Source of the DNA: Octopus sinensis
Taxonomy: Eukaryota
Reading direction: 5' to 3'
DNA length: 64,000 nt
Assembly: GCF_006345805.1 (NCBI RefSeq)
Contig: NW_021832223.1
Coordinates: 248,001-312,000 of the forward strand
Shown: positions 2,437 to 46,100 of the stretch, one piece after another
How the letters are laid out: each line of letters starts with the position of its first letter
Numbering within the stretch: the stretch's first letter is position 1
The notes under the pieces: model-generated
Told to the model about the DNA's origin: nothing
Databases searched by the model: none
Seen by the model: only the letters and a program-made list of their open reading frames with translations
Program-made: the position numbers and the translations under genes

Positions 2437-4141
2437 ATGGGCGATTGGCGTAACTATGATTCATCTCAGCAAGGGAACTCCAACCAGAGATACCCCAATC
2501 AAGGATATCCCCCACAGCAGGGATATCCTCCTCAACAACAAGGATACCCAAACCAAGGATACCCGCAACAGCAGGGATATCCTCCTCAACAACAAGGATA
2601 TCCAAATCAAGGATATCCCAATCAAGGATATCCGCCACAGCAGGGATATCAACAACAAGGATACCCAAATCAAAACTACCCTCCGCAAAGTGGTACAAAT
2701 TACCATCAAGGATTCCCAAATTGCCCCACCGAACAATATAATTCATCTCAAATCGGATTTGCTCAGAATCCACAATTTCCACACAATCAACCACAATTCA
2801 CACAACCTCAGAATTATATGGGATTTGAGGCAAACCAGCCTCTCCAAACCTCCCAATACCAACAACAGCCTCCAACCGCTCCCACTTTTCAACAACAGTG
2901 GGGAACTCCACCTCAGCAGAACATCCAAGGTCGTTTATTGTCAATTATTTCAGGTCAGGCATCGAGACCGTCCATCTTTCCCTGCAGATCTTTCTCTGCG
3001 GAATCAGACGCGAACAGTCTCCGGAAGGCCATGAAGGGATTGGGTATTGTATTAATTGGATGGATAGGCACTACCGAGTCGGTGATTATCGAGATCACGG
3101 GAAACAGAAACAATGCTCAACGTCTCCTAATTCGAGAGGCTTTCCGCAAAATCCATGGACGGGTATTTATGGTTTTGACACCTCAAAGGACTTGCTTAAA
3201 GATCTTGAAGGAGAACTGTCTCGTAGTTTCAAACATCTGGTGGTTAATTGCTACAGATCTCCGGTGGAATTTGACGTGGAGAGCATCAACTGGGCTATAA
3301 AAGTGAGAGAATCGTGTCATTGAAGGGGGCAGGGACCAACGAGGAAATGCTCAATTTGATAATGGTGAGTCGGTCGGCCATCGAATTGCGAGAACTTAAA
3401 AATTTGTATCAAAAAAGTATGAAACATGCAAAAGTGGTAGGATTTAACAGATCGATCGAATCTGACATAAGCAATGACACACTCGGCCACTACACTCGAT
3501 TACTCCTAGAACTGGCCAAGGTGTGCTTGTTTGTTGACGGATTAAGGGCAACCGAGATTGTTCTACCTCAGTGGACATGGATATGGCCCAGGCTGACGCA
3601 AATGAGCTTTATTCTGCCGGGGTTGGACGTTGGGGCACCAACGAGCGTGTTTTCCATCAGATTTTTGCTTCGAGGAGTTTTGTACAATTAAGACAGACCT
3701 TTAAAGAGTATGCCAGGGTTACATTCCTCATTTAGTGGATATTTATAGATGGCGGGTCACTCGATTAACCAAGCTATCAGCAGGGAAATGTCTGGGGATG
3801 TCAAGAACTTGTACGAAGCACTGGGTAATGCATTTGCGTCACATTTACGCATTTTATTAATCAAATCTATTTTTTAGTCGACTACATTATCGACCCGATT
3901 ACTTTCTTTGCTCATTATTTGAACAAATCTGTGAAAGGGCTGGGCACTAATGACCATTTGCTGTGCTATATTATCATTTCCAGATCTGAGGTTTGGGGTT
4001 TAAAGAATGGCGTAGATCGATTTAGGGGATATTTCAGACGTCTTTTTGAATCGCTACAGAGTTCCTTTGGCTCGGTCTGTGAAGCAAGACACTTCCGGAG
4101 ATTATAAGAAACTCCTACTGTTGCTATTGGGAGGACAATAA
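2437..4141 (+). CDS. Annexin A7/A11-like, with GYP(P/Q)Q-rich N-terminus; multi-exon
   Basis: Annexin repeats (LRKAMKGLG|[37 protein letters not shown]) join after removing 23-31 nt introns (e.g. 3044-3067, 3417-3440) and one ~53-nt intron. Confidence 0.92.
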
Positions 4142-13862: not shown

Positions 13863-14958
13863 AAAACAAAATCTATCTTCAAAAAATGCGCATAGACTTA
13901 AGTTCCCACAGCTTGATGCTACGTTAGTTGAATGGATGGATTCGATTGAGTCTAAAGGTAATTTGTACTAATTTATGATTAAGGTGGCTTTCTAATGATG
14001 CTTTAATTTCAATAAGGCTAATTTATTCGCAGCTGAATTAAAACTGGATAATTTTAAAAACTCAAATGGATACCTTCATAATTCAAAAAAAGAGACATGG
14101 TTTTCGAATGACCAAGTTACATGGAGAAATGAGAACTAATGATCCAGTAGATGTCGACTTATTTATCGAAAAATTCATAGAAATATCAAAGAGTTATAAT
14201 GCCGATCAAATTTATAACTTGGACGAAACGGGATTGTATTACAAGCTGATTCCTTCGAAGAGTATTTGTAGAAACAGATTTCAAGGATATAAAAATTTCA
14301 AAGATCGTGTTTCTATTATGCTATGTTCAAATATGAGTGGAAGTCATAAATTGAAACCTGTGATGATCTCGAAACCTAAAATGCCAAGATGTTTTAAATC
14401 TTATGACTATAAATGTTTCATTGATTATTATAGCTCAAAACGAGCTTGGATGACAGGAACAATTTTTACTAACTGGCTATTAAACTTTGATTACCATCTC
14501 AAAAATGAAAAAAAGCAAATTTTACTTCTCATGGACAATTGTCCTTCACATTGTGTTCCATCAAATTTGGATAACATAAAAATATTGTTTTTTCCTCCAA
14601 ATAGTACTGGTCTTATTCAACCTATGGATTTGGGTATAATAAAAACATTTAAAACACATTTCAAAATTGAAAACGACCTCCTAAAAAACATTGAGAACGA
14701 ACATTAAGTTCAATTGATTACATCCATAAGGCGCTATAAGGAAAATGTCATTAAAACTCAAAAAAAGCAGATGGGCATCCAATTCTACTTTAAGAACATT
14801 AATAATGCTTAATTACTTAAAATTTTCTGGATAAAAGTTGTTCTTATTCAAAATTTAATTTACACAAAAGATTGATTTTATTTCTCAAATTGGCCATTTC
14901 TCGAATTGACCACAAAAACACGTGGAACCAAAAATGGCCAATTTCAGAGGAGTCACTG
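13863..14958 (+). mobile_element. pogo/Tigger-like transposon (CENP-B HTH plus DDE_1), interrupted at the 5' end by Merlin
   Basis: KFPQLDATLVEW..ESKG|G with 26-nt intron 13958-13983; YNLDETGLYY, LLMDNCPSH, IQPMDLGIIK; ends ...GAGGAGTCACTG|TA. Confidence 0.85.
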
Positions 14959-16366: not shown

Positions 16367-19300
16367 TTAAGAACGATTTCTGTAAATAGAAGACCGTTCG
16401 TGTCGACAGAAAGATTTAAGTACTCCAAAAATGACTGTTATGACCATAATACCATAGAATGCAGCAATGGAAATGTAGGCCAGTTTAATGAAATGAGAAT
16501 GTGTGAAGATTGATTTTTCGACAATTGTTTTACCATTCTGAGGGTGAGTCAAAGTTGTATCAGAAGTTACAACTAAATCAGCATCAAAGTTTGAATTGTT
16601 GGCACCAATAGTAGAAGTGGTAACACCAATTTTTGAAGAATCAGCATCAATGTTTGAATTGTTGGAACCAATAGTAGAAGTGGTAACACGAATTTTTGAA
16701 GAATCAGCATCAATGTTTGAATTGTTGGAACCAATAGTAGAAGTGGTAACACGAATTTTTGAAGAATCAGCATCAATGTTTGAATTGTTGGCACCAATAG
16801 TAGAAGTGGTAACACGAATTTTTGAAGAATCAGCATCAATGTTTGAATTGTTGGCACCAATAGTAGAAGTGGTAACACGAATTTTTGAAGAATCAGCATC
16901 AATGTTTGAATTGTTGGAACCAATAGTAGAAGTGGTAACACGAATTTTTGAAGAATCAGCATCAATGTTTGAATTGTTGGCACCAATAGTAGAAGTGGTA
17001 ACACGAATTTTTGAAGAATCAGCATCAATGTTTGAATTGTTGGAACCAATAGTAGAAGTGGTAACACGAATTTTTGAAGAATCAGCATCAATGTTTGAAT
17101 TGTTGGAACCAATAGTAGAACTGGTAACACGAATTTTTGAAGAATCAGCATCAATGTTTGAATTGTTGGAACCAATAGTAGAAGTGGTAACACGAATTTT
17201 TGAAGAATCAGCATCAATGTTTGAATTGTCGGAACCAATAGTAGAAGTGGTAACACGAATTTTTGAAGAATCAGCATCAATGTTTGAATTGTTGACACCA
17301 ATAGTAGAAGTGGTAACACCAATTTTTGAAGAATCAGCATCAATGTTTGAATTGTTGTCACCAATAGTAGAAGTGGTAAAACCAATTTTTGAAGAATCAG
17401 CATCAATGTTTGTATTGTTAGCAACAATAGTAGAAGTGGTAAGACGTATTTTTGAAAAATCAGTATCAATGTTTGAATAGTTGGGACCAATAGTAGAAGA
17501 TGTAAAACGAATTTTTGAAGAACCAGCATCAATGTTTGAATTGTTGGCACTAATAGTAGAAGTGGTAACACCAATTTTTGAAGAATCAGCATCAATGTTT
17601 GAATTATTGGCACCAATAGTAGAAGTGTCTACAACAATTTTTGAAGAATCAGCATCAATGTTTGGATTGTTGTCACCAAAAGTAGAAGTGGTTACAACAA
17701 TTTTTGAAGAATCAACATCAATGTTTGTATTGTTGGCACCAATAGTAGAAGTGGTAAAACGAATTTTTGAAGAACCAGCATCAATGTTTGAATTGTTGAC
17801 ACCAATAGTAGAAGTGGTAACACCAATTTTTGAAGAATCAGCATCAATGTTTGAATTGTTGGCATTAATAGTAGAAGTGGTAACATCAATATTTGAAGAA
17901 TCAGCATCAATGTTTGAATTGTTGACACCAATAGTAGAAGTGGTAACACCAATTTTTGAAGAATCAGCATCAATGTTTGAATTATTGGCACCAATAGTAG
18001 AAGTGTCTACAACAATTTTTGAAGAATCAGCATCAATGTTTGAATTGTTGTCACCAATAGTAGAAGTGGTAACACCAATTTTTGAAGAATCAGCATCAAT
18101 GTTTGAATTGATGACACCAATAGTAGAAGTGGTAACACCAATTTTTGAAGAATCAGCATCAATGTTTGAATTGTTGTCACCAATACTAGAAGTGGTAAAA
18201 CGAATTTTTGAAGAATCAGCATCAATGTTTGAATTGTTGAAACCAATAGTAGAAGTGGTAAAACGAATTTTTGAAGAATCAGCATCAATGTTAGAATTGT
18301 TGGCATTAATAGTAGAAGTGGTAACACCAATTTTTGAAGAATCAGAATCAATGTTTGAATTGTTAACACCAATAGTAGAAGTGGTAACACCAATTTTTGA
18401 AGAATCAGCATCAATGTTTGAATTATTGGCACCAATAGTAGAAGTGTCTACAACAATTTTTGAAGAATCAGCATCAATGTTTGAATTGTTGTCACCAATA
18501 GTAGAAGTGGTAACACCAATTTTTGAAGAATCAGCATCAATGTTTGAATTGTTGACACCAATAGTAGAAGTAGTAACACCAATTTTTGAAGAATCAGAAT
18601 CAATGTTTGAATTGTTAACACCAATAGTAGAAGTGGTAACACCAATTATTGAAGAATCAGCATCAATGTTTGAATTATTGGCACCAATAGTAGAAGTGTC
18701 TACAACAATTTTTGAAGAATCAGCATCAATGTTTGAATTGTTGTCACCAATAGTAGAAGTGGTAACACCAATTTTTGAAGAATCAGCATCAATGTTTGAA
18801 TTGTTGACACCAATAGTAGAAGTAGTAACACCAATTTTTGAAGAATCAGCATCAATGTTGAATTGTTGTCACCAATAGTAGAAGTGGTAACACCAATTTT
18901 TGAAGAATCAGCATCAATGTTTGAATTGTTGACACCAATAGTAGAAGTAGTAACACCAATTTTTGAAGAATCAGCATCAATGTTTGAATTGTTGTCACCA
19001 ATAGTAGAAGTGGTAACACCAATTATTGAAGAATCAGCATCAATGTTTGAATTGTTGGCACCAATAGTAGAAGTGGTTACAACTATTTTTGAAGAATCAG
19101 CATCAATGTTTGAATTGTTGTCACCAATAGTAGAAGTGGTAACACCAATTTTTGAAGAATCAGCATCAATGTTTGAATTGTTGACACCAATAGTAGAAGT
19201 GGTAACACCAATTTTTGAAGAATCAGCATCAATGTTTGAATTGTTGTCACCAATAGTAGAAGTGGTAACACCAATTTTTGAAGAATCAGCATCAATGTTT

Positions 19301-22300
19301 GAATTGTTGTCACCAATAATAGAAGTGGTAACACCAATTTTTGAAGAATCAGCATCAATGTTTGAATAGTTGGCACCAATAGTAGAAGATGTAAAACGAA
19401 TTTTTGAAGAACCAGCATCAATGTTTGAATTGTTGGCACTAATAGTAGAAGTGGTAACACCAATTTTTGAAGAATCAGCATCAATGTTTGAATTATTGGC
19501 ACCAATAGTAGAAGTGTCTACAACAATTTTTGAAGAATCAGCATCAATGTTTGAATTGTTGTCACCAAAAGTAGAAGTGGTTACAACAATTTTTGAAGAA
19601 TCAACATCAATGTTTGTATTGTTGGCACCAATAGTAGAAGTGGTAAAACGAATTTTTGAAGAACCAGCATCAATGTTTGAATTGTTGGCACCAATAGTAG
19701 AAGTGGTAACACCAATTTTTGAAGAATCAGCATCAATGTTTGAATTGTTGGCTTTAATAGTAGAAGTGGTAACATCAATATTTGAAGAATCAGCATCAAT
19801 GTTTGAATTGTTGGCACCAATAGTGGAAGTGGTAACACCAATTTTTGAAGAATCAGCATCAATGTTTGAATTGTTGGAACCAATAGTAGAAGTGGCAACA
19901 CCAATTTTTGAAGAATCAGCATCAATGTTTGAATTGTTGGCATTAATAGTAGAAGTGGTAACATCAATATTTGAAGAATCAGTATCAATGTTTGAATTGT
20001 TGGCACCAATAGTAGAAATGGTAACACCAATTTTTGAAGAATCAGCATCAATGTTTGAATTGTTGGAACCAATAGTAGAAGTGGTAACATCAATTTTTGA
20101 AGAATCAGCATCAATGTTTGAATTGTTGGTACCAATAGTAAAAGTGGTAACATCAATTTTTGAAGAATCAGCATCAATGTTTGAATTGTTGGTACCAATA
20201 GTAAAAGTGGTAACATCAATTTTTGAAGAATCAGCATCAATGTTTGAATTGTTGCCACCAATAGTAGAAGTGGTAACATCAATTTTTGAAGAATCAGCAT
20301 CAATGTTTGAATTGTTGGCACCAATAGTGGAAGTGGTAACACCAATTTTTGAAGAATCAGCATCAATGTTTGAATTGTTGGAACCAATAGTAGAAGTGGT
20401 AACATCAATTTTTGAAGAATCAGCATCAATGTTTGAATTGTTGGCACCAATAGTAGAAGTGGTAACATCAATTTTTGAAGAATCAGCATCAATGTTTGAA
20501 TTGTTGGCACCAATAGTAGAAGTGGTAACATCAATTTTTGAAGAATCAGCATCAACGTTTGAATTGTTGGAAGCAAAAGTAGAAGTGGTAACGCCAATTT
20601 TTGAAGAATCAGCATTAATGTTTGAATTGTTGGCACCAATAGTAGAAGTGGTAACCTCAATTTTAGAAGAATCAGCATCAATGTTTGAATTGTTGGCACC
20701 AATAGTAGAAGTAGTAGCACGAATTTTTGAAGAATCAGCATCAATGTTTGAATTGTTCGCACCAATATTAGAAGTGGTTACAATAATTTTGTAAGAATCA
20801 GCATCAATGTTTGTATTGTTGGCACCAATAGTAGAATTGGTAAAAGTAATTTTTGAAGAATCAGCATCAATGTTTGTATTTTTGGCACCAATAGTAGAAG
20901 TGGTAAAACTAATTTTTGAAGAATCAGCATCAATGTTTGAATTGTTGGCACCAATAGTTGAAGTGGTTACAACAATTTTTGAAGAAACAGCATCAATTTT
21001 TGAATAGTTGACACCAATAGTAGAAGTGGTAAAACGAATTTTTGAAGAATCAGCATCAATGTTTGAATTGTTGTCACCAATAGTAGAAGTGGTGAAACGA
21101 ATTTTTGAAGAATCGGCTTCAATGTTTGAATTGTTGGCACCAATAGTAGAAGTGGTTACAACAATTTTTGAAGAATCAGTATCAATGTTTGTATTGTTGG
21201 CACCAATTGTAGAAGTGGTAAAACGTATTTTTGAAGAATCAGCATCAATGTTTGAATTGTTGGCACCAATAGTAGAAGTGTTAAAACGTATTTTTGAAGA
21301 ATCAGTATCAATGTTTGAATTGTTGGAACCAATAGTAGAAGTGGTAACATGAGTGCTTGAAGAATTAACACGAATTTTGGAAGGAATTTGGGTTGTTGGC
21401 ATGTTTTGTGTGGTGATTTCCTTTTTCTTTTCTTTATTTACGTGAACAAGGCAGTGAATATTTTTAAAAAGATGTTGAGGGCCAGAATCAGTGGCTCTAA
21501 CTTGTATGAGATAGTATGCGGGTTTGAGTTGTCCTCTCGCATATATATTTCCGTTGTTGTCAATCAAAAATAAACTTTTGTGGTCGTTTGGTGTTTTGCA
21601 GGAATTCAATTCTTCACTCATGTCAATCGCCGAATCAATGCTGTAGCCTATTTTTCCATTCAGTTCGGAGTCTTCGTCAATGGCAAAAACAGTCGTCAAA
21701 TATTGACTCTTTTCCTTTTTCAAAACAGTTTTGGCATAGCAGCCGTGGCCAGCAAATTCTGGGGAATTGTCGTTCACGTCGACAATATAAAATGTAGCTG
21801 TATAATCAATGTTTGGTACTACTTCATTAATGATATACACATCGTATTGTTTTTGTTTTTCATAATCCGCTGATAATTTAATCGTGACATCTTTTGCTTG
21901 AGTATCGAAAATATTTTCCACACCTTTAGAAGGCATGACTTTATAAGGAAACGTGAACGGCAAATAAATCTCATGTTCTGGAAGGTTTTCACAGACCTTG
22001 GAAAATTGTTGGGTCCTGGCGGTGTAGAAATTGACGTTCTATCAAATAATTTTCCGGACACTACCTTTAGTGTTAAACTAGATCTGACTTGGTTTGGATA
22101 CCATCTTTCAAAACAGGAATCTGTTTCCACTGCAATGCAGGTCACGTTTGAAAATGCCATTGGAATGCTGACATTATAGTCCAGTAAGATCACGTCATAA
22201 ATATAATTCGACGTGGGAACAAGGACGATCTCATCCGTGTTCAGGGTACACTTCACGACGATAGACGTGTCAGACGTTTGTACTCTTATCGTATTGAAGT

Positions 22301-25300
22301 TGAGATAATCAAACGAATCGATGATTTCAGGCATGTTTTTGTCTGCAGTGATGCTTATGCTTACAGGGTCGTAAATTTGGATCTTTACATTAATTAGTTC
22401 GACTTGGGAAGTGAGGGGAGAGTAACATTGAATGATAAATTGATCACTGACGAGGGATCCTGCATTTGCTTGATATATCATTCCTGTATTTTTGTCAATT
22501 TTGTAATTAACGTTTGTCATCTGCATTTTATATTGCGGCATTCCAAATTTGGTAACATAATCCTCGGTGCTCTTCACAGTGACCAACGAGGCCCCGTTTA
22601 TTGGTTGCGCTAAAAATACCACATCGTGTAATTGTGCTGATTTTTTCAAAGCAGAGTTGGAATGCAATGTTATGTCCATATAAGTCCACAAATTTCTATT
22701 TTGACGGTCGAAAGCAAAAAGTCTCAAGTTTATCACCTGAGAAAAAACACTCTCACTCTGGTTATATATAAGAACTGGCGATTCGTTTGTCATTAATCTG
22801 AAATACTTATTCTCAATCAGTTCGTAGTTCATTAGTGCCTTGTCACCTCTAACCTCCCCCACTGCTTTCGGGAGATGCAACATAAATCCGCGGAAAAGTA
22901 CAGGCAATTGGATTACTCGATGATTCCTGGGGAATACCGGGGGTCTTTTTCGAGTTCAAGAACCAAGAAATTAGTATAAAAATATATTTACTTTTATTGT
23001 CATATTATATTGAACTCCATTCACTGCTATTTCGACATTCAAATCAAAAGAGGTTGTCGTCGATTTAGCAATTTGATCAAAAAATATATATTTGGCAACC
23101 TATACAAGTAATAACTTGAATGATAACTTTAACATTTCCTGAATTGTTGCAGGATATGTACTGCTCGGCGTTTAGGACATTGCAAACCACGTTTCCGTCG
23201 CATTTTGAAATGGATAAATTTTTGCAAATGTTGCCAATTACTTGCCCGACTGATGACTGTTCATAGATTGTGTAAGTGATGTCATGGTTGACACCAATAG
23301 TTGAAGTGGTAACACGAGTGCTTGAAGAATTAACACGAATTTTGGAAGGAATTTGGGTTGTTGGCATGTTTTGTGTGGTGATTTCCTTTTTCTTTTCTTT
23401 ATTTACGTGAACAAGGCAGTGAATATTTTTAAAAAGATGTTGAGGGCCAGAATCAGTGGCTCTAACTTGTATGAGATAGTATGCGGGTTTGAGTTGTCCT
23501 CTCGCATATATATTTCCGTTGTTGTCAATCAAAAATAAACTTTTGTGGTCGTTTGGTGTTTTGCAGGAATTCAATTCTTCACTCATGTCAATCGCCGAAT
23601 CAATGCTGTAGCCTATTTTTCCATTCAGTTCGGAGTCTTCGTCAATGGCAAAAACAGTCGTCAAATATTGACTCTTTTCCTTTTTCAAAACAGTTTTGGC
23701 ATAGCAGCCGTGGCCAGCAAATTCTGGGGAATTGTCGTTCACGTCGACAATATAAAATGTAGCTGTATAATCAATGTTTGGTACTACTTCATTAATGATA
23801 TACACATCGTATTGTTTTTGTTTTTCATAATCCGCTGATAATTTAATCGTGACATCTTTTGCTTGAGTATCGAAAATATTTTCCACACCTTTAGAAGGCA
23901 TGACTTTATAAGGAAACGTGAACGGCAAATAAATCTCATGTTCTGGAAGGTTTTCACAGACCTTGGAAAATTGTTGGGTCCTGGCGGTGTAGAAATTGAC
24001 GTTCTATCAAATAATTTTCCGGACACTACCTTTAGTGTTAAACTAGATCTGACTTGGTTTGGATACCATCTTTCAAAACAGGAATCTGTTTCCACTGCAA
24101 TGCAGGTCACGTTTGAAAATGCCATTGGAATGCTGACATTATAGTCCAGTAAGATCACGTCATAAATATAATTCGACGTGGGAACAAGGACGATCTCATC
24201 CGTGTTCAGGGTACACTTCACGACGATAGACGTGTCAGACGTTTGTACTCTTATCGTATTGAAGTTGAGATAATCAAACGAATCGATGATTTCAGGCATG
24301 TTTTTGTCTGCAGTGATGCTTATGCTTACAGGGTCGTAAATTTGGATCTTTACATTAATTAGTTCGACTTGGGAAGTGAGGGGAGAGTAACATTGAATGA
24401 TAAATTGATCACTGACGAGGGATCCTGCATTTGCTTGATATATCATTCCTGTATTTTTGTCAATTTTGTAATTAACGTTTGTCATCTGCATTTTATATTG
24501 CGGCATTCCAAATTTGGTAACATAATCCTCGGTGCTCTTCACAGTGACCAACGAGGCCCCGTTTATTGGTTGCGCTAAAAATACCACATCGTGTAATTGT
24601 GCTGATTTTTTCAAAGCAGAGTTGGAATGCAATGTTATGTCCATATAAGTCCACAAATTTCTATTTTGACGGTCGAAAGCAAAAAGTCTCAAGTTTATCA
24701 CCTGAGAAAAAACACTCTCACTCTGGTTATATATAAGAACTGGCGATTCGTTTGTCATTAATCTGAAATACTTATTCTCAATCAGTTCGTAGTTCATTAG
24801 TGCCTTGTCACCTCTAACCTCCCCCACTGCTTTCGGGAGATGCAACATAAATCCGCGGAAAAGTACAGGCAATTGGATTACTCGATGATTCCTGGGGAAT
24901 ACCGGGGGGTCTTTTTCGAGTTCAAGAACCAAGAAATTAGTATAAAAATATATTTACTTTTATTGTCATATTATATTGAACTCCATTCACTGCTATTTCG
25001 ACATTCAAATCAAAAGAGGTTGTCGTCGATTTAGCAATTTGATCAAAAAATATATATTTGGCAACCTATACAAGTAATAACTTGAATGATAACTTTAACA
25101 TTTCCTGAATTGTTGCAGGATATGTACTGCTCGGCGTTTAGGACATTGCAAACCACGTTTCCGTCGCATTTTGAAATGGATAAATTTTTGCAAATGTTGC
25201 CAATTACTTGCCCGACTGATGACTGTTCATAGATTGTGTAAGTGATTTCCACACTGGCAATAAAAGCCAGTAAACATAGAGTAATCATTGCGGCAGAAAA

Positions 25301-25315
25301 AGCCCTCATTATCAC
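16367..25315 (-). CDS. Giant cadherin-mucin type I membrane protein (signal peptide, two duplicated cadherin blocks, ~75 x 21-aa stalk, TM, short tail)
   Basis: Signal MIMRAFSAAMITLCLLAFIAS; cadherin motifs DYE, DVNDNSPEF, AIDEDSELNG, VRATDSG; TM LAYISIAAFYGIMVITVIFGVL; 1-nt frameshifts near 22940 and 18860. Confidence 0.8.
16580..21345 (-). repeat. Coding 63-bp tandem array (TTSTIGANNSNIDADSSKIxV), about 75 units
   Basis: Directly visible periodic sequence GAAGAATCAGCATCAATGTTTGAATTGTTGGCACCAATAGTAGAAGTGG. Confidence 0.97.
21335..25248. repeat. Near-identical tandem duplication, period 1965/1966 bp, of the cadherin exon block
   Basis: Identical ORFs offset by 1965-1966 (21388/23353; 23077/25043); junction near 23280 reads STIGVN-HD-ITYTIYE in frame. 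Confidence 0.95.
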
Positions 25316-35611: not shown

Positions 35612-37716
35612 TTAGTTGGAATACGTATTACGAATGAGGATATTGTACTTGGCGTCAATATCCCCCCAAATTTGGTTAAATGTCAAGTCGTCCTCATTAG
35701 TGAAATAAAGAATGAACAAAATTCGTTTGTTCACGTCCCCCTCAAAGTATAAATTTGCACCACTAAACAAGACCGGCTCAATCCTCGTTGCCAAAAAGTA
35801 TTTATCGTGTTCACTCCAACCACGACTAATGAAGCGGAAGAACGACATCAAATAAAGCAGAACCCGTCGACAGTGAGAAGACATTAACTCAATCACCTCC
35901 CTTTAACCCCCAACCATACCTTCACCACCGACGAGACCGACGGATTCTCAAAGTACTCCATTAGATCAGGACTCACCAACGACTCAGGAAGGCAGCTTAG
36001 AATCACGAGGATTGTCTGCAGTGTGGCCGGGGCTGAGGCTACAAATATTAATAAATGATCACCCTCGAGAGTGGCAGGAGTACAGCACTGACAATACCCG
36101 TCCATACACTTGACAATATGACAGATCTCACTTTGACGATCCTCCTCCAAACAAGTGTGGATGTCCTCCTGTCTTTGACGCAGAAAACAGTCAATCAGAA
36201 AATATAGTTCTTTGGGGACTGGCAATTCCCTCTGACAACCATCCACTTCACTCCGTGTCTGACAGGCAATTGGCTCCACGAGAGAACACGTATACTTGAG
36301 CTCCTGTCCGACGGAGGTGGGAGGGAAGAATCCTTCAACCGAGACGAAATAATGTGACCCTCCGTTGACCTTGATGATCAACATGTGGTCTATCTTTCCT
36401 TTCTTTTCACGGAAGTACTCCAATTCGAGACTGGTGATGTGGATAGACACGTGCACGGTAACCGACGTCCCGCGGTGAAGGAGGTGACTCCGCGGCTCCA
36501 CGGTGACCCACGTTTTTCTCAGTCCATTCTCAGAATCAGCCACCTCAATGTCAAAAAGGGCTTCCGTGGACCCGACGTTGCTCACGGAAAATGTGCGTTC
36601 GACAATTTCCATGAAAAAGACCTCACCAAAGCGAAGTTCGTTGCTAGAAATGAGGACCTTCGGCTGGAGGTGCATTTCCTTCCTGGAATTCTCTTCATAA
36701 AAATATTTCGTCGTCTTCTCCTTCTTCCGTTGGTCAACGGTCCCCACTTGCACGGAAAACAGTCCCCTAACAGGTCGGTGGTCACTAAAACGGATATTCG
36801 GAAGGCTTTGATAGACAAGACACTGGACGGGATTGGCAGGACAGTGGAAATAGAGGACACGGTCAGTCCAGGCGGGGACTCTGCCCTTCCCACTCGAGTC
36901 GTACTGGTCAGTCCCACTGTCGAATTTGTAGGTCGGCGGGAACGTGATTGGGGCCTCCTCGTAGTCCACAAACACCTCCCCTTCCCGTCGCCCGACAGAC
37001 AGTTGGTCGGCCGCAAGGAGGTCGGAAAGACGGCCGTTTTTGACTTTCCAACGGACATGGTCGTTTGGGATATTGGTCAGTCGGTAATTGAGATCCCCCA
37101 ACCAAAAAACCACGTCTTGTCTGTCTTGGAGAAACGTATTTGCCATATCTCGAAAGTTTTGATTTCTTTCAGCAACATTCTCGTCATAGGCAGGAAAGTG
37201 TGACCCCACAAACGTGATTTGTGAGTCACGGAAACGAAGTGTGGCAGCCAATCCCCCTTTATTGCCAATCAGTCCCATCAGCCCAGTGGCCAAATACTGT
37301 TCCCTGACCAACGAAATGTCCCCCTGGCAGTGATTTGCCGTGTAAATGAAAAGTGTGATGCCAAAAAGTCGCTGTCGGGATGTCCTCACGAATCCTCCAT
37401 TCATGTATCGGTCGATGAGGGACAACCACTCTTGTTCGCGGACGGTGATCCCCGACGACCTCAGAAAGGCCTCTGTGCCCAAATCCATTTCCTGGAGGGA
37501 CACTGCGTATATTTCTGGGAGGGGATATTCGGGAGGAGGAAGGAATAATTCTCGCAGTGATTCCTTTGGCAGTCGGGAGTTGACGTTGAAGGTTATGCAC
37601 ATTATGTTGATGGACGAGTATGTCGTGTATTCCTTTTGGTGTTCGTTCAAGTAGTAGGCCAGTTCGAGTTTTGTCTGGACTGGTTGGGACATTTTATTAC
37701 CGTCCAACTGAGACAT
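35612..37716 (-). CDS. OCRL: Inositol polyphosphate 5-phosphatase OCRL/INPP5B (5-phosphatase, ASH, RhoGAP-like)
   Basis: GNKGG, WLGDLNYRL, PPTYKF, PAWTDRVL, SDHRPV, then FGEV (ASH) and VPKELYFLID. Confidence 0.92.
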
Positions 37717-38344
37717 TGTGATGCCTGTTTTATGTCCAGATTTCACCAGATTAATTATTAATATTCAAACATCTGAATAATATATTAATTATATTCTAAT
37801 TAAATTATTTATTATCCAAAGCAATCCTTAAGTTAATGCCAGTGTTATGTTCTAAATGAGCTTATTTAGTTAAAAGATTAGGCGTGTTTGGTGTCGGAAT
37901 TTGCTCTTATCTTTTTATACGTGTCTGTTTATACTCTCAATTGGACATTTTATAGGTTGGCGTGATATCTCTAGTTATACAATGTATCTTTGACTTTAGA
38001 CATGTTTTCCAACATTACTTTATTGTTTTATTAAATAGTGGCATTGCGTTTCCAATGCCTAATTGCGATCTCTGGCTGAATATGTATAACTAGAATACGA
38101 TCTTTGAGAAATACCCCAGTCGTCCTCAAGCCCGACTTGACTAAATAGGACAGACATCACCAAGCCAGGCATCAGAATGGGCCTAGCAAGGCAGTTTAGT
38201 CCGTAAAAAACCATTGAGCGTAATTAGCTGTTCATTGGGTACGGCAATAAAATTCACATTGTTAGTTAGGCCTACAATTTGTTAATAACAATCTAATTCA
38301 CAAAGCTCTGGGAAAAGCTGGTTTTCCTTAAATTCTGGAAACCG

Positions 38345-39174: not shown

Positions 39175-40382
39175 TTATTCAAACAATTGGCTGTTACCCC
39201 AGCGCGAATATTTTGCAATAAAATCGTCTGCCTTCTCTTTTTGAACTGAATATTCCTCCACCAACGGGTTTCTCCACCGGTCATAATCAACGTCCACAAT
39301 TCCTGCCACCACCTCCTTCCCAAAAAAACGCGGAAACGTCCTCTCATCCTCAATCAAATGTGCATACCCCCCGTCCATCCCCAATTCGACAGCAAAGTAC
39401 GGAAAACCAGACGGAATCTACAATCACCCCACAAAATACAGCAGTTCGGAGAGTCTTTCCTCGAAAATCGACAACTTTCCTGTTCATAGCCCACTCACCC
39501 TCGCACTCCATCAACGCCTTCTTGAAGTACAGAAGTGGGGCCAGTCCTTCCTCTATCGGAATGCACTCCACGACCATGTGAGGAGCACTGCTCAAGTTCT
39601 TGACTGTCTCCATAAACAGAAGGCTTTGTCCCGTCGTGTTCTGAAAGAATTGGACGAGCCTTCCCTTGAGTGTCTGCAACTCCTCGAAAGTACTCTCCAA
39701 ACACCCCCTGGACGACCCCTCATGCTCGACTGCCACCAAAAGACAATGTCCGTCCACCAGTGACTGCACTGAGGGCACACTCACATACACAAACTGTCCT
39801 ACTAACACCTGCAAGTGAATATTCGACTTGCCCAGACATAACTGACAGTCCTCCATTGCTTGGAGTGCACGTTTATGGTCTACTATCACCCAATCAGACT
39901 ACTCTTTATGGCCACTGTTATGTCCTGTCGTCCACTGTCCTCAAATACACTCAATTTGCCCACTCCTCTCTTCTGTCCGTAGTCGAATGAACTGTGCTTC
40001 TCGTCGTACACCAGTTCTCGCAGGTCCTTCATATTTTCATTTTCGCCCTTCCGCTTGACTGAACACACGTGCTGGACACTCCCATCCCTGTCCACGTGTT
40101 GTAGCACTTGGGGTTTCCTTAGACTAGCCATTTCTGACTCAATTTCCTTAGCTAGTTCCTGTCTTGTTATAAATATGATTATACTTTATTTCCCGTCAGT
40201 TCAGCCTTTATTAGTCTTGCTCCTAACTTGTTTAGTCTGTTTTCTAAAGACGTGTCTTCCTCTGTTTTTCTGCCTTTTTTCCAACTTTTTCTGGTGGTTG
40301 GATCGGGTTTGGAAGGTTCTTGATCAGTGGGTTTGAGGAATTGTCTTTTCGAATGCGAATTTCCGCCATCCATGTGCGACAT
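39175..40382 (-). CDS. CWF19L2: CWF19-like protein 2 (CwfJ domains)
   Basis: RLNKLGARLIKAELTG, CQLCL, SLVDGHCLL, PHMVVECIP, YFKKALMECEGEWAMNRK, FPRFFGKEV. Confidence 0.88.
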
Positions 40383-42289: not shown

Positions 42290-44884
42290 TCAGTTTGTAT
42301 ATTTTCTAACAATGAGGCCATCGACTACCTGACTGCTAAAGTGCATGCGAGAACTCTTCCAAATGCTAGTTGATTGGAGACGACGGAACAAGGCGATCAA
42401 ATACTTGTGAATATATATTTCACAAACACACAGCACACAGGAGATCAGAGTGAACAAACCCAATGCAATGAAGGAGCCGATATGATGACTCGGAGTGATC
42501 ATGTTCGCCATCATGTTCATGTCTACGTGGCAAATATCGTCAATGAAATATTTGTCGGTCAAAGTCGGCAGTGTCTTGATTTGTACAAGTTTGTTTATTT
42601 TATTCTGCATGTCCTCCTATTAATGTAGTGGACAGGTTTACCCTGTAGACTGAGTCTTTGGGTATTCCGAACCCGTAGGGACTTTTCCCGAACTGTCCCG
42701 TCACCACCAGGTCACATGCTGAGTTATATTTGGGGATTTTCGTATAAATTTCTTCATTCAGAAAAAAGTGGATGTCTCCATTTCTGAGGTCGTGGAAGGC
42801 CTGTTCATTGGACGTGTATTCTACAAATTTGTCGGCCTCAAACTCATTTTGAAATTTGGAGGCGAGGACTGAGCCTTTCAGTACCCCGATTTTAGTCCAA
42901 TGATTGTTCTATAATATTTTGAGTGAAATACAAAAATGTCATCCAAGTCGACCTGCATTCCGTCGTCCGTCGATATCAGGGTGGCCAGGAATGCGGTGTA
43001 GTACGCCATGATAATGAAGGCAGCAAATGCCCAAAACGATTGGAGGAATCTGGCCGAGACCGACTTGGGGTTTTTGGCTTGCAGGGAATTCATGGTCAGG
43101 ACAGAAATGACGGTGGTGAATCCTGACCCTGCCAGTGAGTGAGATGGGAGGAACCAATGGCATACACCTTCTCCTTGGCACTGCTGGTGTTCCGACCAAA
43201 AGGACTCAACCATTCGCACGTGGCTGTGATCAAAACCAGCATAAAAATGAGAGTCAGAATGATCATCCACACGTCCGTTTGGAAGGGCAAAAATATAATA
43301 TCCAGTGAAGGTCTTTGTTTTTTGTACACGAATATTAACGAATTGACTGTCATCTTTCTTATCGACACAAAGTCCACGTACTGCAAAGTAGGGACATAAC
43401 CCACCTCCAATCTTTGGCTGGAAATGGTCAGAGATGCCACTGCCAAGTCGGCACGTGCCTCGACCACCTCACCAATAAGTCCATTCCAAGTGCCATTGGA
43501 CAGCACCCCATAACTTGTGTCTTTAAGGATGTACATCTCAATGTTTCTAAAAGGAATGGAAAGGCTAAACGTGAGATATTCAGGAATCAGTTCCAGGAAA
43601 ATTTGAATCAGAAAACCATGGCAGCAGTAAACGTCGTACAGTCCCCCCATGAGCACTTGGAGGGTCCGGAAATCGGCAAAGGACTTGTCGATCCACTTTG
43701 AGTCTTCGCGGAGTATTTGCAGACACACAACCCCCGCCTGGCACACCTCAATGCCTGAGGTGGCCATCACGAAAGGCTCGTCCAGGCGCACAACCACACG
43801 GAAGGCAGAGGACGAGAAGACAAATCAGAAAGACTGGTAGTCGTCCGTTCAATTCGCGGTCTGTCGGAAATGTCCATCAGACTGTAAAGAACAGTCTCCA
43901 CACGTTCGAATTTGAACAAATATAGAAAGACTCCCAGTTTGTGTTGTTGCTTGTATTTGACGACTGTTCTGTGTACGTCGATGGGTGTCCCGGAAAACTC
44001 TTCAATGAAATGATTCATAAGGGTGTCTGGGAAGATAGTGGAATTGAAATAATCGACCGAAACAACTTTTTGGTAGCAGTATTTTTCCGAGGAAGTCAAA
44101 TTTCCCTTAGCAGTCACATACAGGATGTCTCGATTGTGGTACTTGTTCTGAATATGACAGAGGATTGTGGGGATGTGGGGGTCGTCCACGTACAACACGA
44201 CTACTGGCTGTATGATATCCACCACAATTTCGAACGTGAGTTTGTCAGTTCTCGTCATTTCCTCCATGTCGTGGAGGCGGATGACGTGGAAGAAAACGTG
44301 ATTTTTTTGACAATAGTCCAGAATAGAAGACATAAAGCCGTCGAGTTCAAGTTGTGTACTGATCAGTAGAATCACTTGGAGGGAGTTGTGCTGGCCAATC
44401 AATCGTTGCACGAGCAGCACGTGATGGGCGACCTCCGAATTAATGACCGTCTCTCCCTAAAATCAGTAATGAGCAATCTCGAGGGACACAACACAATCTA
44501 GTCAATATACATTAATTCCACGACGGATTTGTCTCCATAAACATCACTTATGAATTTGGAGTTGCAGCCAGTTCTCAGTGGCAGTTGGAGAACGGGGATG
44601 TTGGCCAGCCCCCCGAAGTAAAAGACTGGAATGCAAAGACCGTTGTATATGAGTCCATCCAATCTGTGGGCGGCTACTGTTATGGTGTTCAGATTGACGT
44701 TCGAAAGTCGAAGTTTCACAATGTTTATAGAAGAATGGTTAGCCAGAATGCAGTCGATTGATGAACAGGGCACAGAATTATCGAGTATATACACAATCGT
44801 GGTGTTTGTCTGATGAGTGGAATAAGTACTAATAATAAAAAATGTCACGATCATCGACATGCGGCTATAATTCATTAATAACAT
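42290..44884 (-). CDS. Ionotropic glutamate receptor subunit, NMDA GluN2-like, divergent
   Basis: CCHG, GTWNGLIGEV..ADLAVASLTISSQR, EWLSPFG, M2 VLTMNSL..NPKSVSAR, M3 YYTAFLATL, PYGFGIPKDS. Confidence 0.8.
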
Positions 44885-45178
44885 CTCTTCCTCGTAATAT
44901 TCGATCCATCCTATCTTAATTAGTTGATCACTGCTCCTTATTCCGATGCACCCATCCGACACTGACAATTCTCTTTATATGACCCCACTGTTCACACCTT
45001 TTTCACTAAACTGGTCAGTCTCCAAAATAGATCAGAATTTTAGAGCTAATTTCTCGGTAGATTCCCATTTATTCTTAACAAATGACCAATTTTTATATGC
45101 TATATTTTCGGTGCACATTAATCCAGGGATTAGTCTCAGAAGACAAGTTAATAATAATTGACAGAAGACTACCATAAT

Positions 45179-46100
45179 ATGTATAAATACTATTTCCATA
45201 GTGAAGGTGGTCATGGCACGTCTGCTTGAGGAGAACCCCTACAGTAACACCAAGACTGGACTACTGGGAGACCAGCGGGACACAATGTTGATCAATGAAG
45301 TTCTCAGAAAAGTGAAATAATCTCCACAATACGACTTAGGACAAAATGGGCTGCGGATTCGTTCGGGGTCATGCAATTCCCGAAGACTTTGTGTACGGAA
45401 TCCCTCCAATCAAGCAAAGATTCGGCGTCTCTGATGGTTTGGTAGGAATAGTGACTCTCAGCTATGCGCGGATGGCCAGACATTCAACTTGGTAAACAAA
45501 AAAGCAAATCAGCCCCCCGCGAGAGGGACTTTATAGCAATGAACACAGCGGCCACTCAGTCCGGGATTGTCACTGCCAAGGAAGTCAACAGTTTCTTCAA
45601 GATGCACGACATCCGAAAGAAGGTCCCCAAAAAATCCACGACAAAATCGAAATCCTTTGAGTCGATGGTGCACGGAGTGAAATCCCGGTGCCTTTTTTTG
45701 ATGTCATTTAGTCCGTCGACTCCGATAAGTTACGTGATCGAACACAAATACCAAACTGACTACATCAACGAAATGTACAACAAAAAACATGACAAAGACG
45801 GACTCCTCAAAAAAGTAATCCGTTCGATTTAAATTTAGAAACGTAGCCAAGACGAAGTATACATGACTAAGACCAGTCTTTCTCGCCATTTTGCGCCGCC
45901 GGAAGAGCCGAGGGAGTTGTGGCAAATGAGGCAATTCCGAGACAAGGTTCCCCAAGTCTCTCATTGAAAAGGCGACTCCCCACCTCGAAACTTTCCGAAA
46001 CACAGAATCGCGGGAGCGAGCATTCAAGAAATACCAGAACGAGAAAATAATAAACAGTGGACCTCTACAAATGGGCATTGGCAAACTCCCAACTCATTAA
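45179..46100 (+). CDS. CFAP77: Cilia- and flagella-associated protein 77
   Basis: Spliced LGDQRDTML..FVYGI..RDFIAMN..GIVTAKE..HDIR..R|PSTPISYVIEHKY..LWQMRQF..HLETF. Confidence 0.8.

What the first reader, a model, noticed from the sequence alone, without database searches (positions are those of the whole stretch)
16367..25315. Giant cadherin-mucin hybrid adhesin (~2,900 aa predicted)
Seen: signal peptide, two copies of a 628-codon block of roughly six cadherin-like folds, a ~75 x 21-aa Ser/Thr/Asn stalk with an N-x-S/T sequon in most units, one TM, and a ~15-aa tail with no catenin-binding domain. Known: cadherin repeats plus a mucin stalk is the layout of vertebrate CDHR5 (mu-protocadherin). 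Inference: an independently built, far-projecting surface adhesin, possibly for host attachment in a parasite.
Basis: partly seen in the sequence, partly recalled or inferred. Interest (0 to 1): 0.72.

Follow-up and report, generated by a model that had tools for sequence, protein, structure and literature searches.

The report
Interrupted octopus cadherin with giant repeat stalk
On the minus strand of this Octopus sinensis window lies a very diverged protocadherin-type gene whose membrane-proximal linker has grown into 75 copies of a 21-residue Ser/Thr/Asn-rich repeat. The reading frame is interrupted about eight times in this assembly, so the 2,900-residue "giant adhesin" is a conceptual translation and not a demonstrated protein, and the host is a free-living octopus, not a parasite.

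Summary
The features are real and sit at the stated coordinates, on the minus strand (25309 to 16367). They are:
- a signal peptide;
- two tandem copies of a 1,965/1,966-bp block, identical except for one C in a C-run;
- a 63-bp array of 75.8 copies;
- one TM helix and a 16-residue tail.

It is not one ORF. Each block carries GT..AG segments of 16 and 26 nt at positions where paralogues have 388- and 60-nt introns, plus a frameshift at a T5 run. Copy B lacks one C. One array unit lacks one A.

Only the sixth EC domain of each block passes Pfam. EC1, EC2 and EC5 are supported by protocadherin matches. EC3 and EC4 rest on size and paralogue homology alone.

The stalk has 34% Ser+Thr, 73 N-x-S/T sequons and 0.1% Pro, so it is not a classical PTS mucin.

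The contig is Octopus sinensis VCDQ01005863.1. The only relatives among 1.8 billion representatives are two fragmentary O. sinensis paralogues that evolve near-neutrally. No protein model covering the blocks or the stalk-TM-tail was found.

My reading is a lineage-restricted protocadherin derivative with a coding minisatellite. It is probably recently disabled (~0.5). A live gene obscured by assembly indels and shifted splice sites remains possible (~0.37).

The parts
25253..25309 (-). Start codon (25309-25307) and signal peptide MRAFSAAMITLCLLAFIAS
   Evidence: Sequence and translation. It is one of only two 19-residue windows with Kyte-Doolittle hydropathy above 1.8 in the conceptual protein.
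23284..25249 (-). Block A: a six-unit (EC1-EC6) protocadherin-like ectodomain. It ends in a partial stalk unit (KIRVNSSSTRVTTSTIGVN) that joins in frame to EC1 of block B.
   Evidence: Direct repeat with 1,965/1,966 bp spacing. Base-by-base comparison. Residues 22-179 match protocadherin-10 and residues 457-617 match protocadherin gamma-A9.
21319..23283 (-). Block B: second copy of the ectodomain. It is identical to block A over about 1,930 bp except for one missing C.
25066..25081 (-). 16-nt GT..AG segment (gttattacttgtatag) inside EC1. Its twin in block B is at 23100-23115. It sits where paralogue L002 has a 388-nt intron.
   Evidence: Frame change seen. Paralogue exon map and junction sequences. 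Removing it gives an EC1 colinear with protocadherin-10 EC1.
24944..24948 (-). T5 run where the frame shifts by one base relative to the paralogue, which reads straight through. Its twin in block B is at 22978-22982.
   Evidence: The paralogue ORF is continuous here (YITVRTGELKWQVLDINDNPPIF).
24904..24909 (-). C6 run in block A. The matching run in block B (22939-22943) has only five C. This is the only difference between the two blocks, and it breaks the frame of block B.
24004..24029 (-). 26-nt GT..AG segment (gtagtgtccggaaaattatttgatag) at the EC4/EC5 boundary. Its twin in block B is at 22039-22064. It sits where paralogue L003 has a 60-nt intron. An alternative 68-nt intron would end at 23962.
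23404..23673 (-). EC6 of block A, the only domain of the block that passes the Pfam Cadherin threshold. The canonical VDVNDNSPEF, AIDEDSELNG and ATDSG motifs flank or lie within it.
   Evidence: PF00028, E 3.4e-8, 34.2 bits against a cut-off of 28.8.
21439..21708 (-). EC6 of block B.
   Evidence: PF00028, E 8.6e-8, 32.9 bits.
16576..21349 (-). 63-bp tandem array of about 75 units encoding NIDADSSKIGVTTSTIGANNS, which is three heptads (IGVTTST, IGANNSN, IDADSSK). Units 25-35 are repeated almost exactly as units 55-65.
   Evidence: TRF gives period 63, 75.8 copies, 92% matches and 0% indels, with a 21-bp sub-period. Unit list. Composition, sequons and the 30-unit offset.
18854..18861 (-). Single-base deletion in one array unit (TCAAACATT becomes TCAACATT). 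It splits the stalk into a 906-codon and an 833-codon open frame.
16418..16492 (-). Transmembrane helix FIKLAYISIAAFYGIMVITVIFGVL.
   Evidence: Hydropathy scan and translation.
16367..16417 (-). Cytoplasmic tail KSFCRHERSSIYRNRS (16 residues) and the stop codon. ATTAAA signals follow at 16300 and 16240.

Best explanation
**What it is.** This is a lineage-restricted, very diverged protocadherin-type gene of Octopus sinensis, at VCDQ01005863.1:264367-273315 on the minus strand. Two things happened to it.
- A 63-bp in-frame minisatellite expanded between the last EC domain and the TM helix, to about 75 units (1,575 residues).
- The whole six-EC ectodomain plus the first stalk unit was tandemly duplicated very recently, with an in-frame junction.

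**What it would make (inferred).** If translated in full, the product would be a type I membrane glycoprotein:
- 12 EC-sized domains, of which only the EC5-EC6 linker in each block keeps the canonical Ca2+-binding motifs;
- a long, heavily N-glycosylated and probably O-glycosylated repeat spacer;
- one TM helix and a 16-residue tail with no signalling or catenin-binding region.

Such a protein would act as a passive, far-projecting surface or glycocalyx molecule, not a junctional cadherin.

**Its state in this assembly (shown).** The frame is broken in each block by a 16-nt and a 26-nt intron vestige and by a T-run frameshift. It is broken again by a missing C in block B and a missing A in the array.

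**My commitment (inferred).** The copy in this genome is a recently disabled or decaying gene. It was under protein-level constraint until shortly before the duplication. I do not think it is a proven functional giant adhesin.
For: **Organism and locus**
- The neighbouring protein P0003 maps to GCA_006345805.1, contig VCDQ01005863.1. That accession is O. sinensis. The paralogues are RefSeq O. sinensis proteins.

**Cadherin identity**
- Pfam Cadherin passes for EC6 of each block.
- The conceptual block hits protocadherin-10 (E 1.7e-12, residues 22-179 on chain 3-153) and protocadherin gamma-A9 (residues 457-617).
- A family profile hits protocadherin gamma-A9 at E 2e-12.

**Lineage restriction**
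- There are only two hits among 1.84 billion representatives, both from O. sinensis.
- The stalk, TM and tail have no hit at all.

**The stalk is or was coding**
- EC6 runs in frame into the array. After one base is restored, the array runs in frame into the only TM helix and the stop, giving 1,669 codons without a stop.

**Recent duplication**
- There are 0 substitutions and 1 indel over about 1,930 bp, and the junction is in frame.

**Evidence for disablement**
- No frame is open across the locus. Translation stops at codon 118 or 668 as assembled.
- The 16- and 26-nt segments and the T5 shift are shared by both copies. They lie where paralogues have real introns or continuous coding sequence.
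- No protein model covering the blocks or the stalk-TM-tail came up as a self-hit, and two exact ORF look-ups found nothing.
- The two paralogues are fragmentary. One has in-frame stops, and they differ with dN/dS 0.81.
- The repeat units show no excess of synonymous change: 42 synonymous against 177 non-synonymous, where 48 against 136 are possible.
Against: - There is not one nonsense substitution in about 2,950 conceptual codons of 33-38% GC DNA. Every break is a 1-nt run-length change or an intron vestige.
- The single difference between the two otherwise identical blocks is an indel in a homopolymer run. That is the signature of residual long-read consensus error in sequence that short reads cannot polish, so at least the C-run and A-run breaks may not be real.
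- Two deletions confined to introns, with 1.9 kb of exon left open, are hard to explain by neutral decay.
- An alternative splice model with 161-nt and 68-nt introns puts all shared defects into introns and keeps block A fully in frame.
- The absence of a protein model could result from repeat masking and the lack of homologues to seed one.
- No RNA or read data could be consulted.
Confidence: 0.5

Rival explanations
1. A live gene. Under this reading the locus is expressed, and the breaks are partly assembly errors and partly introns.
- Splicing from T|GTATAG (25071) to AAAAAG|AC (24910), 161 nt, and from AAG|GTAGTG (24029) to CCAAG|GTC (23962), 68 nt, in each block removes every defect the two copies share.
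- Only a C in block B and an A in the array then need to be consensus errors.
For: - The model was tested in silico. Block A is in frame as assembled up to the C-run of block B. With two single-base additions the whole 2,828-codon frame is open.
- All shared defects fall inside the proposed introns, and all proposed exons are open.
- A TACTAAT branch-point-like motif lies about 32 nt upstream of the first acceptor.
- Introns of 54-61 nt occur in neighbouring and paralogous genes.
- There are no nonsense codons, and the duplication junction is in frame.
- The copies differ only by a homopolymer indel, which suggests consensus error.
Against: - The proposed splice sites are weak: CTT|GTATAG as donor and AAAAAG| and CCAAG| as acceptors.
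- The model deletes the half of EC1 that still aligns with protocadherin-10 and with the paralogue, and that is still a 42-codon open frame.
- It also removes the linker and first strand of EC5.
- No protein model covering the blocks or the stalk-TM-tail, and no transcript-derived protein, was found in the databases searched.
Confidence: 0.37
2. The two-block structure is an assembly artefact, a falsely duplicated 1,965-bp segment. The true gene would have one six-EC block and about 2,300 codons.
For: - The copies are identical over about 1,930 bp apart from a homopolymer length.
- Long-read assemblers can mis-resolve short tandem duplications that lie next to a 4.8-kb minisatellite.
Against: - The junction is not a plain repeat of the block's end. 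The last 35 nt of block A differ at 5 positions from the same stretch of block B, and a new 'HD' codon pair joins it in frame to EC1.
- There is no gap or run of N.
Confidence: 0.1
3. The array is a non-coding minisatellite that happens to lie beside a cadherin relic. Its open frames would exist only because the unit lacks stop codons in several frames.
For: - Two frames on the minus strand and at least one on the plus strand are open for hundreds of codons.
- There is no synonymous bias among units.
Against: - The period is a multiple of three and the units show 0% indels.
- The Ser/Thr/Asn frame is the one that continues from EC6. After one base is restored, it leads into the only TM helix, a basic stop-transfer stretch and the stop.
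- A cadherin ectodomain with a signal peptide needs that TM helix.
- Stop-creating changes are under-represented in that frame: 1 observed against about 6 expected.
Confidence: 0.03

Closest known systems
CDHR5 (mu-protocadherin, mucin-like protocadherin) of vertebrates
   Same: It is a type I membrane protein with N-terminal EC repeats, a membrane-proximal tandem-repeat Ser/Thr-rich region, one TM helix and no catenin-binding domain. The repeat region also varies in length and sequence between species (PMC10916864).
   Different: - CDHR5 has a 4 x 31-residue Thr/Ser/Pro-rich repeat (PMC10916864) and, from my own knowledge, four EC domains. Here there are 6 (x2) EC-sized units and 75 x 21 residues with 0.1% Pro.
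- There is no sequence relationship. The best matches are protocadherin-10 and gamma protocadherins, and no CDHR5 chain is among those listed.
- The tail is 16 residues and ends in -RNRS, which is not a class I PDZ-binding end of the kind CDHR5 uses.
- CDHR5 is an expressed, studied protein. This locus is interrupted and was not found as a protein model.
Six-EC protocadherins (clustered alpha/beta/gamma and delta-2, e.g. protocadherin-10), including the expanded octopus protocadherin repertoire
   Same: - These are the best sequence matches.
- EC1 starts right after the signal peptide with I-x-Y-x-I-x-E...G-x-x-(I/V)-G-N-(I/L).
- From my own recollection of the family, a C-x5-C loop occurs in EC1 (here CDGNVVC). 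This was not tested.
- The block has the length of six EC domains.
- RefSeq names the paralogues 'protocadherin gamma-A4-like' and 'fat-like cadherin'.
   Different: - The paralogues are only 25-31% identical to the window's gene, and no other protein was found at E <= 0.001 among 1.84 billion representatives apart from these two.
- Four of the five inter-domain linkers have lost the DxNDNxPxF and DxDxGxN calcium motifs. Examples are ELEKDPPVF and AVGEVRGDKA, where the paralogue has DINDNPPIF and AVDKDSGVNA.
- There is no protocadherin cytoplasmic domain.
- A 1,575-residue repeat stalk is inserted before the TM helix.
Membrane-tethered mucins and mucin-domain glycoproteins with VNTR-encoded stalks
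   Same: A long, perfectly periodic, minisatellite-encoded extracellular repeat rich in Ser/Thr lies next to a TM helix. The array shows internal segmental duplication, which suggests length instability.
   Different: - It has no proline, 14% Ile, 14.5% Asn and 11% Asp, and a heptad substructure.
- It has one N-glycan sequon per unit, not a dense O-glycan PTS pattern.
- AlphaFold models 18-residue helices with pLDDT 73 and not disorder.
- It has no SEA or other mucin-associated domain.
- A conventional small Pro/Thr/Ser mucin-like gene lies in the same window at 48765-49793, which makes the contrast clear.

Membership tests
Cadherin superfamily | At least one extracellular cadherin (EC) domain recognised by the family model (Pfam PF00028) above its curated threshold. 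| tested here: met
   EC6 of block A scores 34.2 bits and EC6 of block B scores 32.9 bits, against a cut-off of 28.8. The isolated 136-residue segment scores 28.0, just under the cut-off.
Cadherin superfamily | Tandem EC domains joined by Ca2+-binding linkers (DxNDNxPxF, DxD, DxxG). | tested here: inconclusive
   Only the EC5-EC6 linker is canonical (VDVNDNSPEF, AIDEDSELNG, ATDSG). The other four linkers are degenerate in the window's gene, but the first is intact in the paralogues. EC1, EC2 and EC5 are supported by alignment to solved protocadherins. EC3 and EC4 are not independently supported, and their model had pLDDT 36.5.
Protocadherins (clustered / delta) | Six or seven EC domains, with the closest similarity to protocadherins and not to classical cadherins. 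| tested here: met
   Top solved-structure hits are protocadherin-10, gamma-A9 and alpha-7. N-cadherin appears only at E about 1e-2 to 4e-5. The block length of 641-655 codons fits six EC domains.
Protocadherins (clustered / delta) | A family-type cytoplasmic domain (constant-region exons or CM1/CM2 motifs). | tested here: not met
   The tail is 16 residues, KSFCRHERSSIYRNRS, followed by a stop. It has no Pfam hit (protein 5).
CDHR5 / mucin-like protocadherin | Orthology or detectable sequence relationship to CDHR5. | tested here: not met
   No CDHR5 chain is among the chains listed with E up to 1. The homologue searches return only gamma protocadherins and O. sinensis paralogues.
CDHR5 / mucin-like protocadherin | A Thr/Ser/Pro-rich membrane-proximal tandem repeat, and a cytoplasmic tail that binds PDZ scaffolds. 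| tested here: not met
   A repeat is present, but Pro is 0.1%. The C-terminus -RNRS is not an S/T-x-hydrophobic end. The CDHR5 features are taken from PMC10916864.
Mucin (PTS) domain | A long tandem-repeat region dominated by Pro, Thr and Ser, and extended because of dense O-glycosylation. | tested here: inconclusive
   Ser+Thr is 33.8% and there are 73 N-x-S/T sequons, but there is no Pro. No Pfam family matches. AlphaFold gives periodic helices at pLDDT 73 from a single sequence, which is weak evidence either way. Glycosylation cannot be tested here.
Functional protein-coding gene (as opposed to a pseudogene) | An uninterrupted reading frame after removal of spliceable introns, with transcript or protein support. 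| tested here: not met
   The frame is broken under every model as assembled. No protein model covering the blocks or the stalk-TM-tail was found. Transcripts and raw reads cannot be examined with these tools.

The most novel reading that the evidence does not exclude
The locus is a live octopus gene, and the 16-nt and 26-nt GT..AG segments are genuine micro-introns that are spliced out. They sit exactly at ancestral intron positions and are flanked by exons that have stayed open. With homopolymer miscalls explaining the other breaks, the product would be a 12-EC cadherin of about 2,950 residues on a new, proline-free, heptad-based Ser/Thr/Asn/Ile stalk. These would be by far the shortest spliceosomal introns known in a bilaterian animal with otherwise long introns.
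Probability: 0.04. Interest if true: 0.8.

Novelty: new variant of a known kind. Interest (0 to 1): 0.36.

Why it matters
**If the gene is live.** It would show that cephalopods have turned a member of their expanded protocadherin repertoire into something like a membrane mucin. That would be a convergent counterpart of vertebrate CDHR5, but with a stalk roughly ten times longer and chemically different: no proline, and one N-glycan site every 21 residues. It would be a candidate for epithelial surface, sucker or sensory-cell biology.

**If the gene is dead.** It is a snapshot of how a coding minisatellite and a whole-ectodomain duplication arise in a gene that is losing or has just lost function. 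It is also a caution that long conceptual ORFs in long-read assemblies of repeat-rich genomes should not be taken as proteins.

**In either case.** The intron vestiges are an unexplained detail of intron evolution that is worth one look with RNA data.

Tried and rejected
- **Plus-strand reading.** Reading the stated interval on the plus strand gives only repeat-derived frames. The gene is on the minus strand.
- **Single intronless ORF.** Rejected. No frame is continuous.
- **Ordinary introns at the three shared breaks.** Rejected for the first two. The only GT..AG solutions that keep the ancestral exons are 16 and 26 nt long, and the T5 break has no in-phase acceptor.
- **Structure of EC2-EC4.** The AlphaFold model, built with the two paralogues as alignment, had pLDDT 36.5 and was unusable, so no fold search was run.
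- **Structure of 11 stalk units.** The model shows periodic helices at pLDDT 73 from a single sequence. I treat this as inconclusive. The beta-solenoid idea I had from the 3 x 7 periodicity got no support.
- **Selection test on the repeat units.** There is no synonymous excess, so the test is uninformative given array homogenisation.
- **Retrocopy hypothesis for the intron vestiges.** No target-site duplication beyond chance was found: the longest shared word is 9 nt, which is the mode of the shuffles. Downstream there is only a short A-rich stretch.
- **Looking for a called gene or transcript.** Exact look-ups of two ORFs returned nothing. A search with stalk, TM and tail returned nothing.
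- **Looking for the 63-bp array or the TM and tail next to the paralogues.** Absent from L002 and L003.
- **Literature search for assembly frameshift problems in O. sinensis.** Nothing relevant was found.
- **A correction to my own working.** I first thought the donor after EC1 exon 1 was identical over 9 nt between the window and L002. The sequence shows only 6 of 9 matches, so that argument is dropped.

Full report
**1. What is in the sequence**

The interval 16367-25315 reads sensibly only on the minus strand. An ATG at 25309 opens a hydrophobic signal sequence, MRAFSAAMITLCLLAFIAS. It is followed at once by ITYTIYEQSSVGQVIGNICKNL, the typical start of a protocadherin EC1.

Downstream lie two tandem copies of a 1,965/1,966-bp block. 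A base-by-base alignment shows them identical over about 1,930 bp, except for one C in a C-run. That C is present at 24909 and absent at the matching site near 22944.

Block A ends in a partial stalk unit (KIRVNSSSTRVTTSTIGVN). That unit is joined in frame, through two new codons (HD), to ITYTIYEQ of block B.

Block B runs into a 63-bp tandem array at 21349-16576: 75.8 copies, 92% matches, 0% indels, score 7987. The array is followed by a unique 30-residue juxtamembrane stretch, one TM helix (FIKLAYISIAAFYGIMVITVIFGVL), a 16-residue basic tail and a stop at 16369-16367.

A hydropathy scan of the conceptual protein finds only these two hydrophobic segments. It is far beyond chance in DNA of 32-38% GC. 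Outside this locus the whole 64-kb window has only two ORFs longer than 300 codons.

**2. It is not one open reading frame**

No frame is open across the locus. The breaks are of two kinds.

*(a) Breaks shared by both blocks.*
- A 16-nt segment, gttattacttgtatag, at 25081-25066, with its twin at 23115-23100.
- A one-base frame change at a T5 run, 24948-24944, with its twin at 22982-22978.
- A 26-nt segment, gtagtgtccggaaaattatttgatag, at 24029-24004, with its twin at 22064-22039.

*(b) Unique breaks.*
- Block B has C5 where block A has C6.
- One array unit reads TCAACATT instead of TCAAACATT near 18858. This splits the stalk into frames of 906 and 833 codons.

I tested several models in a script.

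| Model | Result |
|---|---|
| Remove the four GT..AG segments and edit four single bases | open frame of 2,952 codons |
| Remove only the four segments | stop at codon 118 |
| Introns of 161 nt (T\|GTATAG at 25071 to AAAAAG\|AC at 24910) and 68 nt (AAG\|GTAGTG at 24029 to CCAAG\|GTC at 23962) in each block, as assembled | in frame to codon 668, the C-run of block B |
| The same introns plus two single-base additions | open frame of 2,828 codons |

**3. Organism and relatives**

The neighbouring 607-residue 5-phosphatase ORF (35893-37716) is an exact match to a protein on contig VCDQ01005863.1 of GCA_006345805.1. That accession is the Octopus sinensis assembly. From the coordinates, the window is bases 248001-312000 of that contig, in the same orientation. 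The 'parasite' suggestion is therefore wrong.

A word-seeded search of 5.8 billion proteins with the conceptual block found only two weak gecko protocadherin-gamma hits (E 3e-4). It found no self-hit, so no protein model in that collection covers the blocks. A search with stalk, TM and tail found nothing at all.

A full HMMER scan of 1.84 billion representatives with the 389-residue EC2-EC4 frame found just two proteins. They are XP_029655459.1 ('protocadherin gamma-A4-like') and XP_029655460.1 ('fat-like cadherin-related...'). Both come from O. sinensis contig VCDQ01002361.1, about 100 kb apart.

These paralogues are 25-31% identical to the window's gene, and they are incomplete.
- L003 has two in-frame stops before EC2 and ends without a TM helix.
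- L002 diverges after EC4.
- Neither has the 63-bp array or the TM and tail.
- The two are 94.8% identical in DNA, with dN/dS 0.81, which is close to neutral.

**4. Cadherin content**

Pfam recognises one cadherin domain per block, EC6, at 34.2 and 32.9 bits against a cut-off of 28.8. Six segment-wise scans found nothing else.

Against solved structures, the conceptual block (16- and 26-nt segments removed, T-run corrected) aligns as follows.
- Residues 22-179 align with protocadherin-10 residues 3-153, that is EC1 into EC2.
- Residues 457-617 align with protocadherin gamma-A9 residues 362-520, that is EC5-EC6.

A profile of the window's EC2-EC4 plus the two paralogue translations hits protocadherin gamma-A9 at E 2e-12 over profile positions 5-171. 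Much of that signal comes from the paralogues' canonical DINDNPPIF and AVDKDSGVNA motifs, which in the window's gene read ELEKDPPVF and AVGEVRGDKA.

So EC1, EC2, EC5 and EC6 are supported. EC3 and EC4 are inferred from length and paralogue homology only, and AlphaFold gave no usable model (pLDDT 36.5).

Only the EC5-EC6 linker keeps the Ca2+-binding motifs (VDVNDNSPEF, AIDEDSELNG, ATDSG). 'Six folds per block' matches the six-EC protocadherin plan but is not proven.

**5. The intron vestiges**

Mapping the RefSeq paralogues onto their loci shows two introns.
- A 388-nt intron lies inside EC1: L002 23154-23541, ...LAE | VVDRIDYDG...
- A 60-nt intron lies at the EC4/EC5 boundary: L003 10610-10668, ...TITVQ | IMPKDY...

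The window's 16-nt and 26-nt GT..AG segments lie at exactly those two points (...VIIQ | VAKYIFFDQ... and ...LTLK | NVNFYT...). Removing them gives a protein colinear with the paralogues and with protocadherin-10. They are therefore shrunken introns, not sequencing noise.

From general knowledge of animal splicing they are too short to be removed. Retained, they shift the frame.

Two deletions that stay inside introns while 1.9 kb of exon remains open are unlikely under neutral decay. I could not explain this fully.
- The 161/68-nt splice model would make the old intron and adjoining exon pieces neutral, and so accounts for it best. Its splice sites are weak, however, and it discards half of EC1 and the first strand of EC5.
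- A retrocopy origin finds no support. There is no target-site duplication beyond chance.

By contrast, the T5 break is a true frameshift relative to the paralogue, which is continuous there.

**6. The stalk**

The unit NIDADSSKIGVTTSTIGANNS is three heptads: IGVTTST, IGANNSN and IDADSSK. TRF also reports the 21-bp sub-period.

The composition of the 1,575 residues is S 19.6, N 14.5, I 14.4, T 14.2, D 10.9, A 6.7, G 6.4 and P 0.1%. There are 73 N-x-S/T sequons, and 69 of the 75 units have exactly one.

Variation is concentrated at residues 10, 11 and 18 of the unit and is mostly non-synonymous: 42 synonymous against 177 non-synonymous changes. Stop-creating changes are rare, 1 observed against about 6 expected.

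Units 25-35 recur almost exactly as units 55-65, which is an internal 1,890-bp duplication.

The array must be or have been coding. It is the only connection, in frame, between a signal-peptide-bearing ectodomain and the only TM helix.

It is not a classical Pro/Thr/Ser mucin domain. AlphaFold on 11 units predicts 18-residue helices separated by 3-residue breaks at pLDDT 73. From a single repetitive sequence, that is weak evidence. The physical nature of the stalk is open: extended glycopolymer or helical rod.

**7. Interpretation**

*Shown.* This is a protocadherin-derived, octopus-restricted gene locus with the architecture signal peptide, 2 x 6 EC, 75 x 21-residue repeat, TM and a 16-residue tail, and its frame is interrupted about eight times in this assembly.

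*Inferred.* The expansion of the juxtamembrane linker and the ectodomain duplication are recent events mediated by unequal recombination. The intact protein would be a passive, heavily glycosylated, far-projecting surface molecule with mostly Ca2+-free EC linkers and no cytoplasmic signalling part.

*Functional status.*
- For a dead or dying copy: the shared frame breaks, the absence of any protein model covering the blocks or the stalk-TM-tail, the near-neutral fragmentary paralogues, and neighbouring broken genes.
- For a live gene: no nonsense codon anywhere; the only difference between the blocks is a homopolymer indel, typical of consensus error in sequence that short reads cannot polish; the in-frame junction; and a splice model that hides all shared defects in introns.

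I put a recently disabled gene at about 0.5, a live gene at about 0.37, a duplication artefact at about 0.1 and a non-coding array at about 0.03.

**8. Comparison and novelty**

The closest analogue in layout is vertebrate CDHR5, but every CDHR5-specific test failed: sequence relationship, Pro-rich repeat and PDZ-binding tail. The closest relatives in sequence are six-EC protocadherins, but the cytoplasmic domain test failed.

This is best described as a new, lineage-specific variant of the 'cadherin on a repeat stalk' design. Its status as a working gene is unproven. I rate the interest as moderate to low, and it would rise if transcripts show an intact message.

Noticed in passing
window 48765-49793 (+): A complete 342-codon ORF with a signal peptide, about 14 tandem 42-bp (14-residue) Thr/Ser/Pro-rich repeats (TRLPTTLSTSNST...), a TM helix and a short tail. 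It has a weak Pfam TMEM154-like hit (E 1.9e-4, below threshold). It is a conventional small membrane mucin-like gene, 23 kb from the cadherin locus.
   Followed up: partly
window 42302-44974 (-): Ionotropic glutamate receptor-like coding sequence (NMDA-type best hits, E 1e-21) spread over at least six successive frames. One junction looks like a 54-nt GT..AG intron (about 44501-44457). Another, near 43800, has no intron signal and no homopolymer. No protein model is listed for it in the locus table. It may be another pseudogene.
   Followed up: partly
window 35893-37746 (-): An intronless OCRL/INPP5B-like inositol 5-phosphatase of 607 residues, with the 5-phosphatase and ASH domains on record but no RhoGAP domain on record. 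It is only about 31% identical to its nearest non-self relative (Lingula), and no closer orthologue from another species was listed. It looks like a fast-evolving, retrogene-like copy.
   Followed up: partly
window 2437-3323 (+): An annexin-like sequence with a Gln/Pro/Tyr/Gly-rich N-terminal repeat (54-bp period). Its annexin repeat appears, by eye, to continue in a second overlapping frame ([18 protein letters not shown]..., then ...[19 protein letters not shown]...). It is again interrupted.
   Followed up: no
window 14066-14707 (+); 50420-51785 (-); 61135-61956 (+); 60432-61019: Mobile-element content around the locus. A pogo/Tigger-type DDE_1 transposase fragment (E 1.5e-32) lies 1.7 kb beyond the cadherin stop codon. 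LINE-type reverse-transcriptase-like and endonuclease-like ORFs are judged by eye only. A 95-bp satellite also occurs in paralogue locus L002 at 37406-38005.
   Followed up: no
window 24813-24805 (block A), twin in block B: An RGD tripeptide (GEVRGDKAL) occupies the place of the lost DxDxGxN calcium-binding motif of EC2, where the paralogues have AVDKDSGVNA. It could be chance, since a tripeptide is short.
   Followed up: no
L003 11610-11759: The truncated paralogue XP_029655460.1 is followed within 300 bp by a 60-bp repeat made of telomere-like TAACCC motifs, which suggests a rearrangement breakpoint.
   Followed up: no
window 16596-20794 (+): The antisense strand of the array is also open for up to 474 codons (repeat ...PIVEVVTPIFEESASMFELL...). 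This is a by-product of a stop-free repeat unit and not evidence of a second gene.
   Followed up: yes
window about 45213-45832 (+) and 39350-39889 (-): A called CFAP77 gene (158 residues) and an uncalled CwfJ C-terminal domain ORF (PF04677, E 5.8e-20) lie between the phosphatase and glutamate-receptor-like sequences.
   Followed up: no
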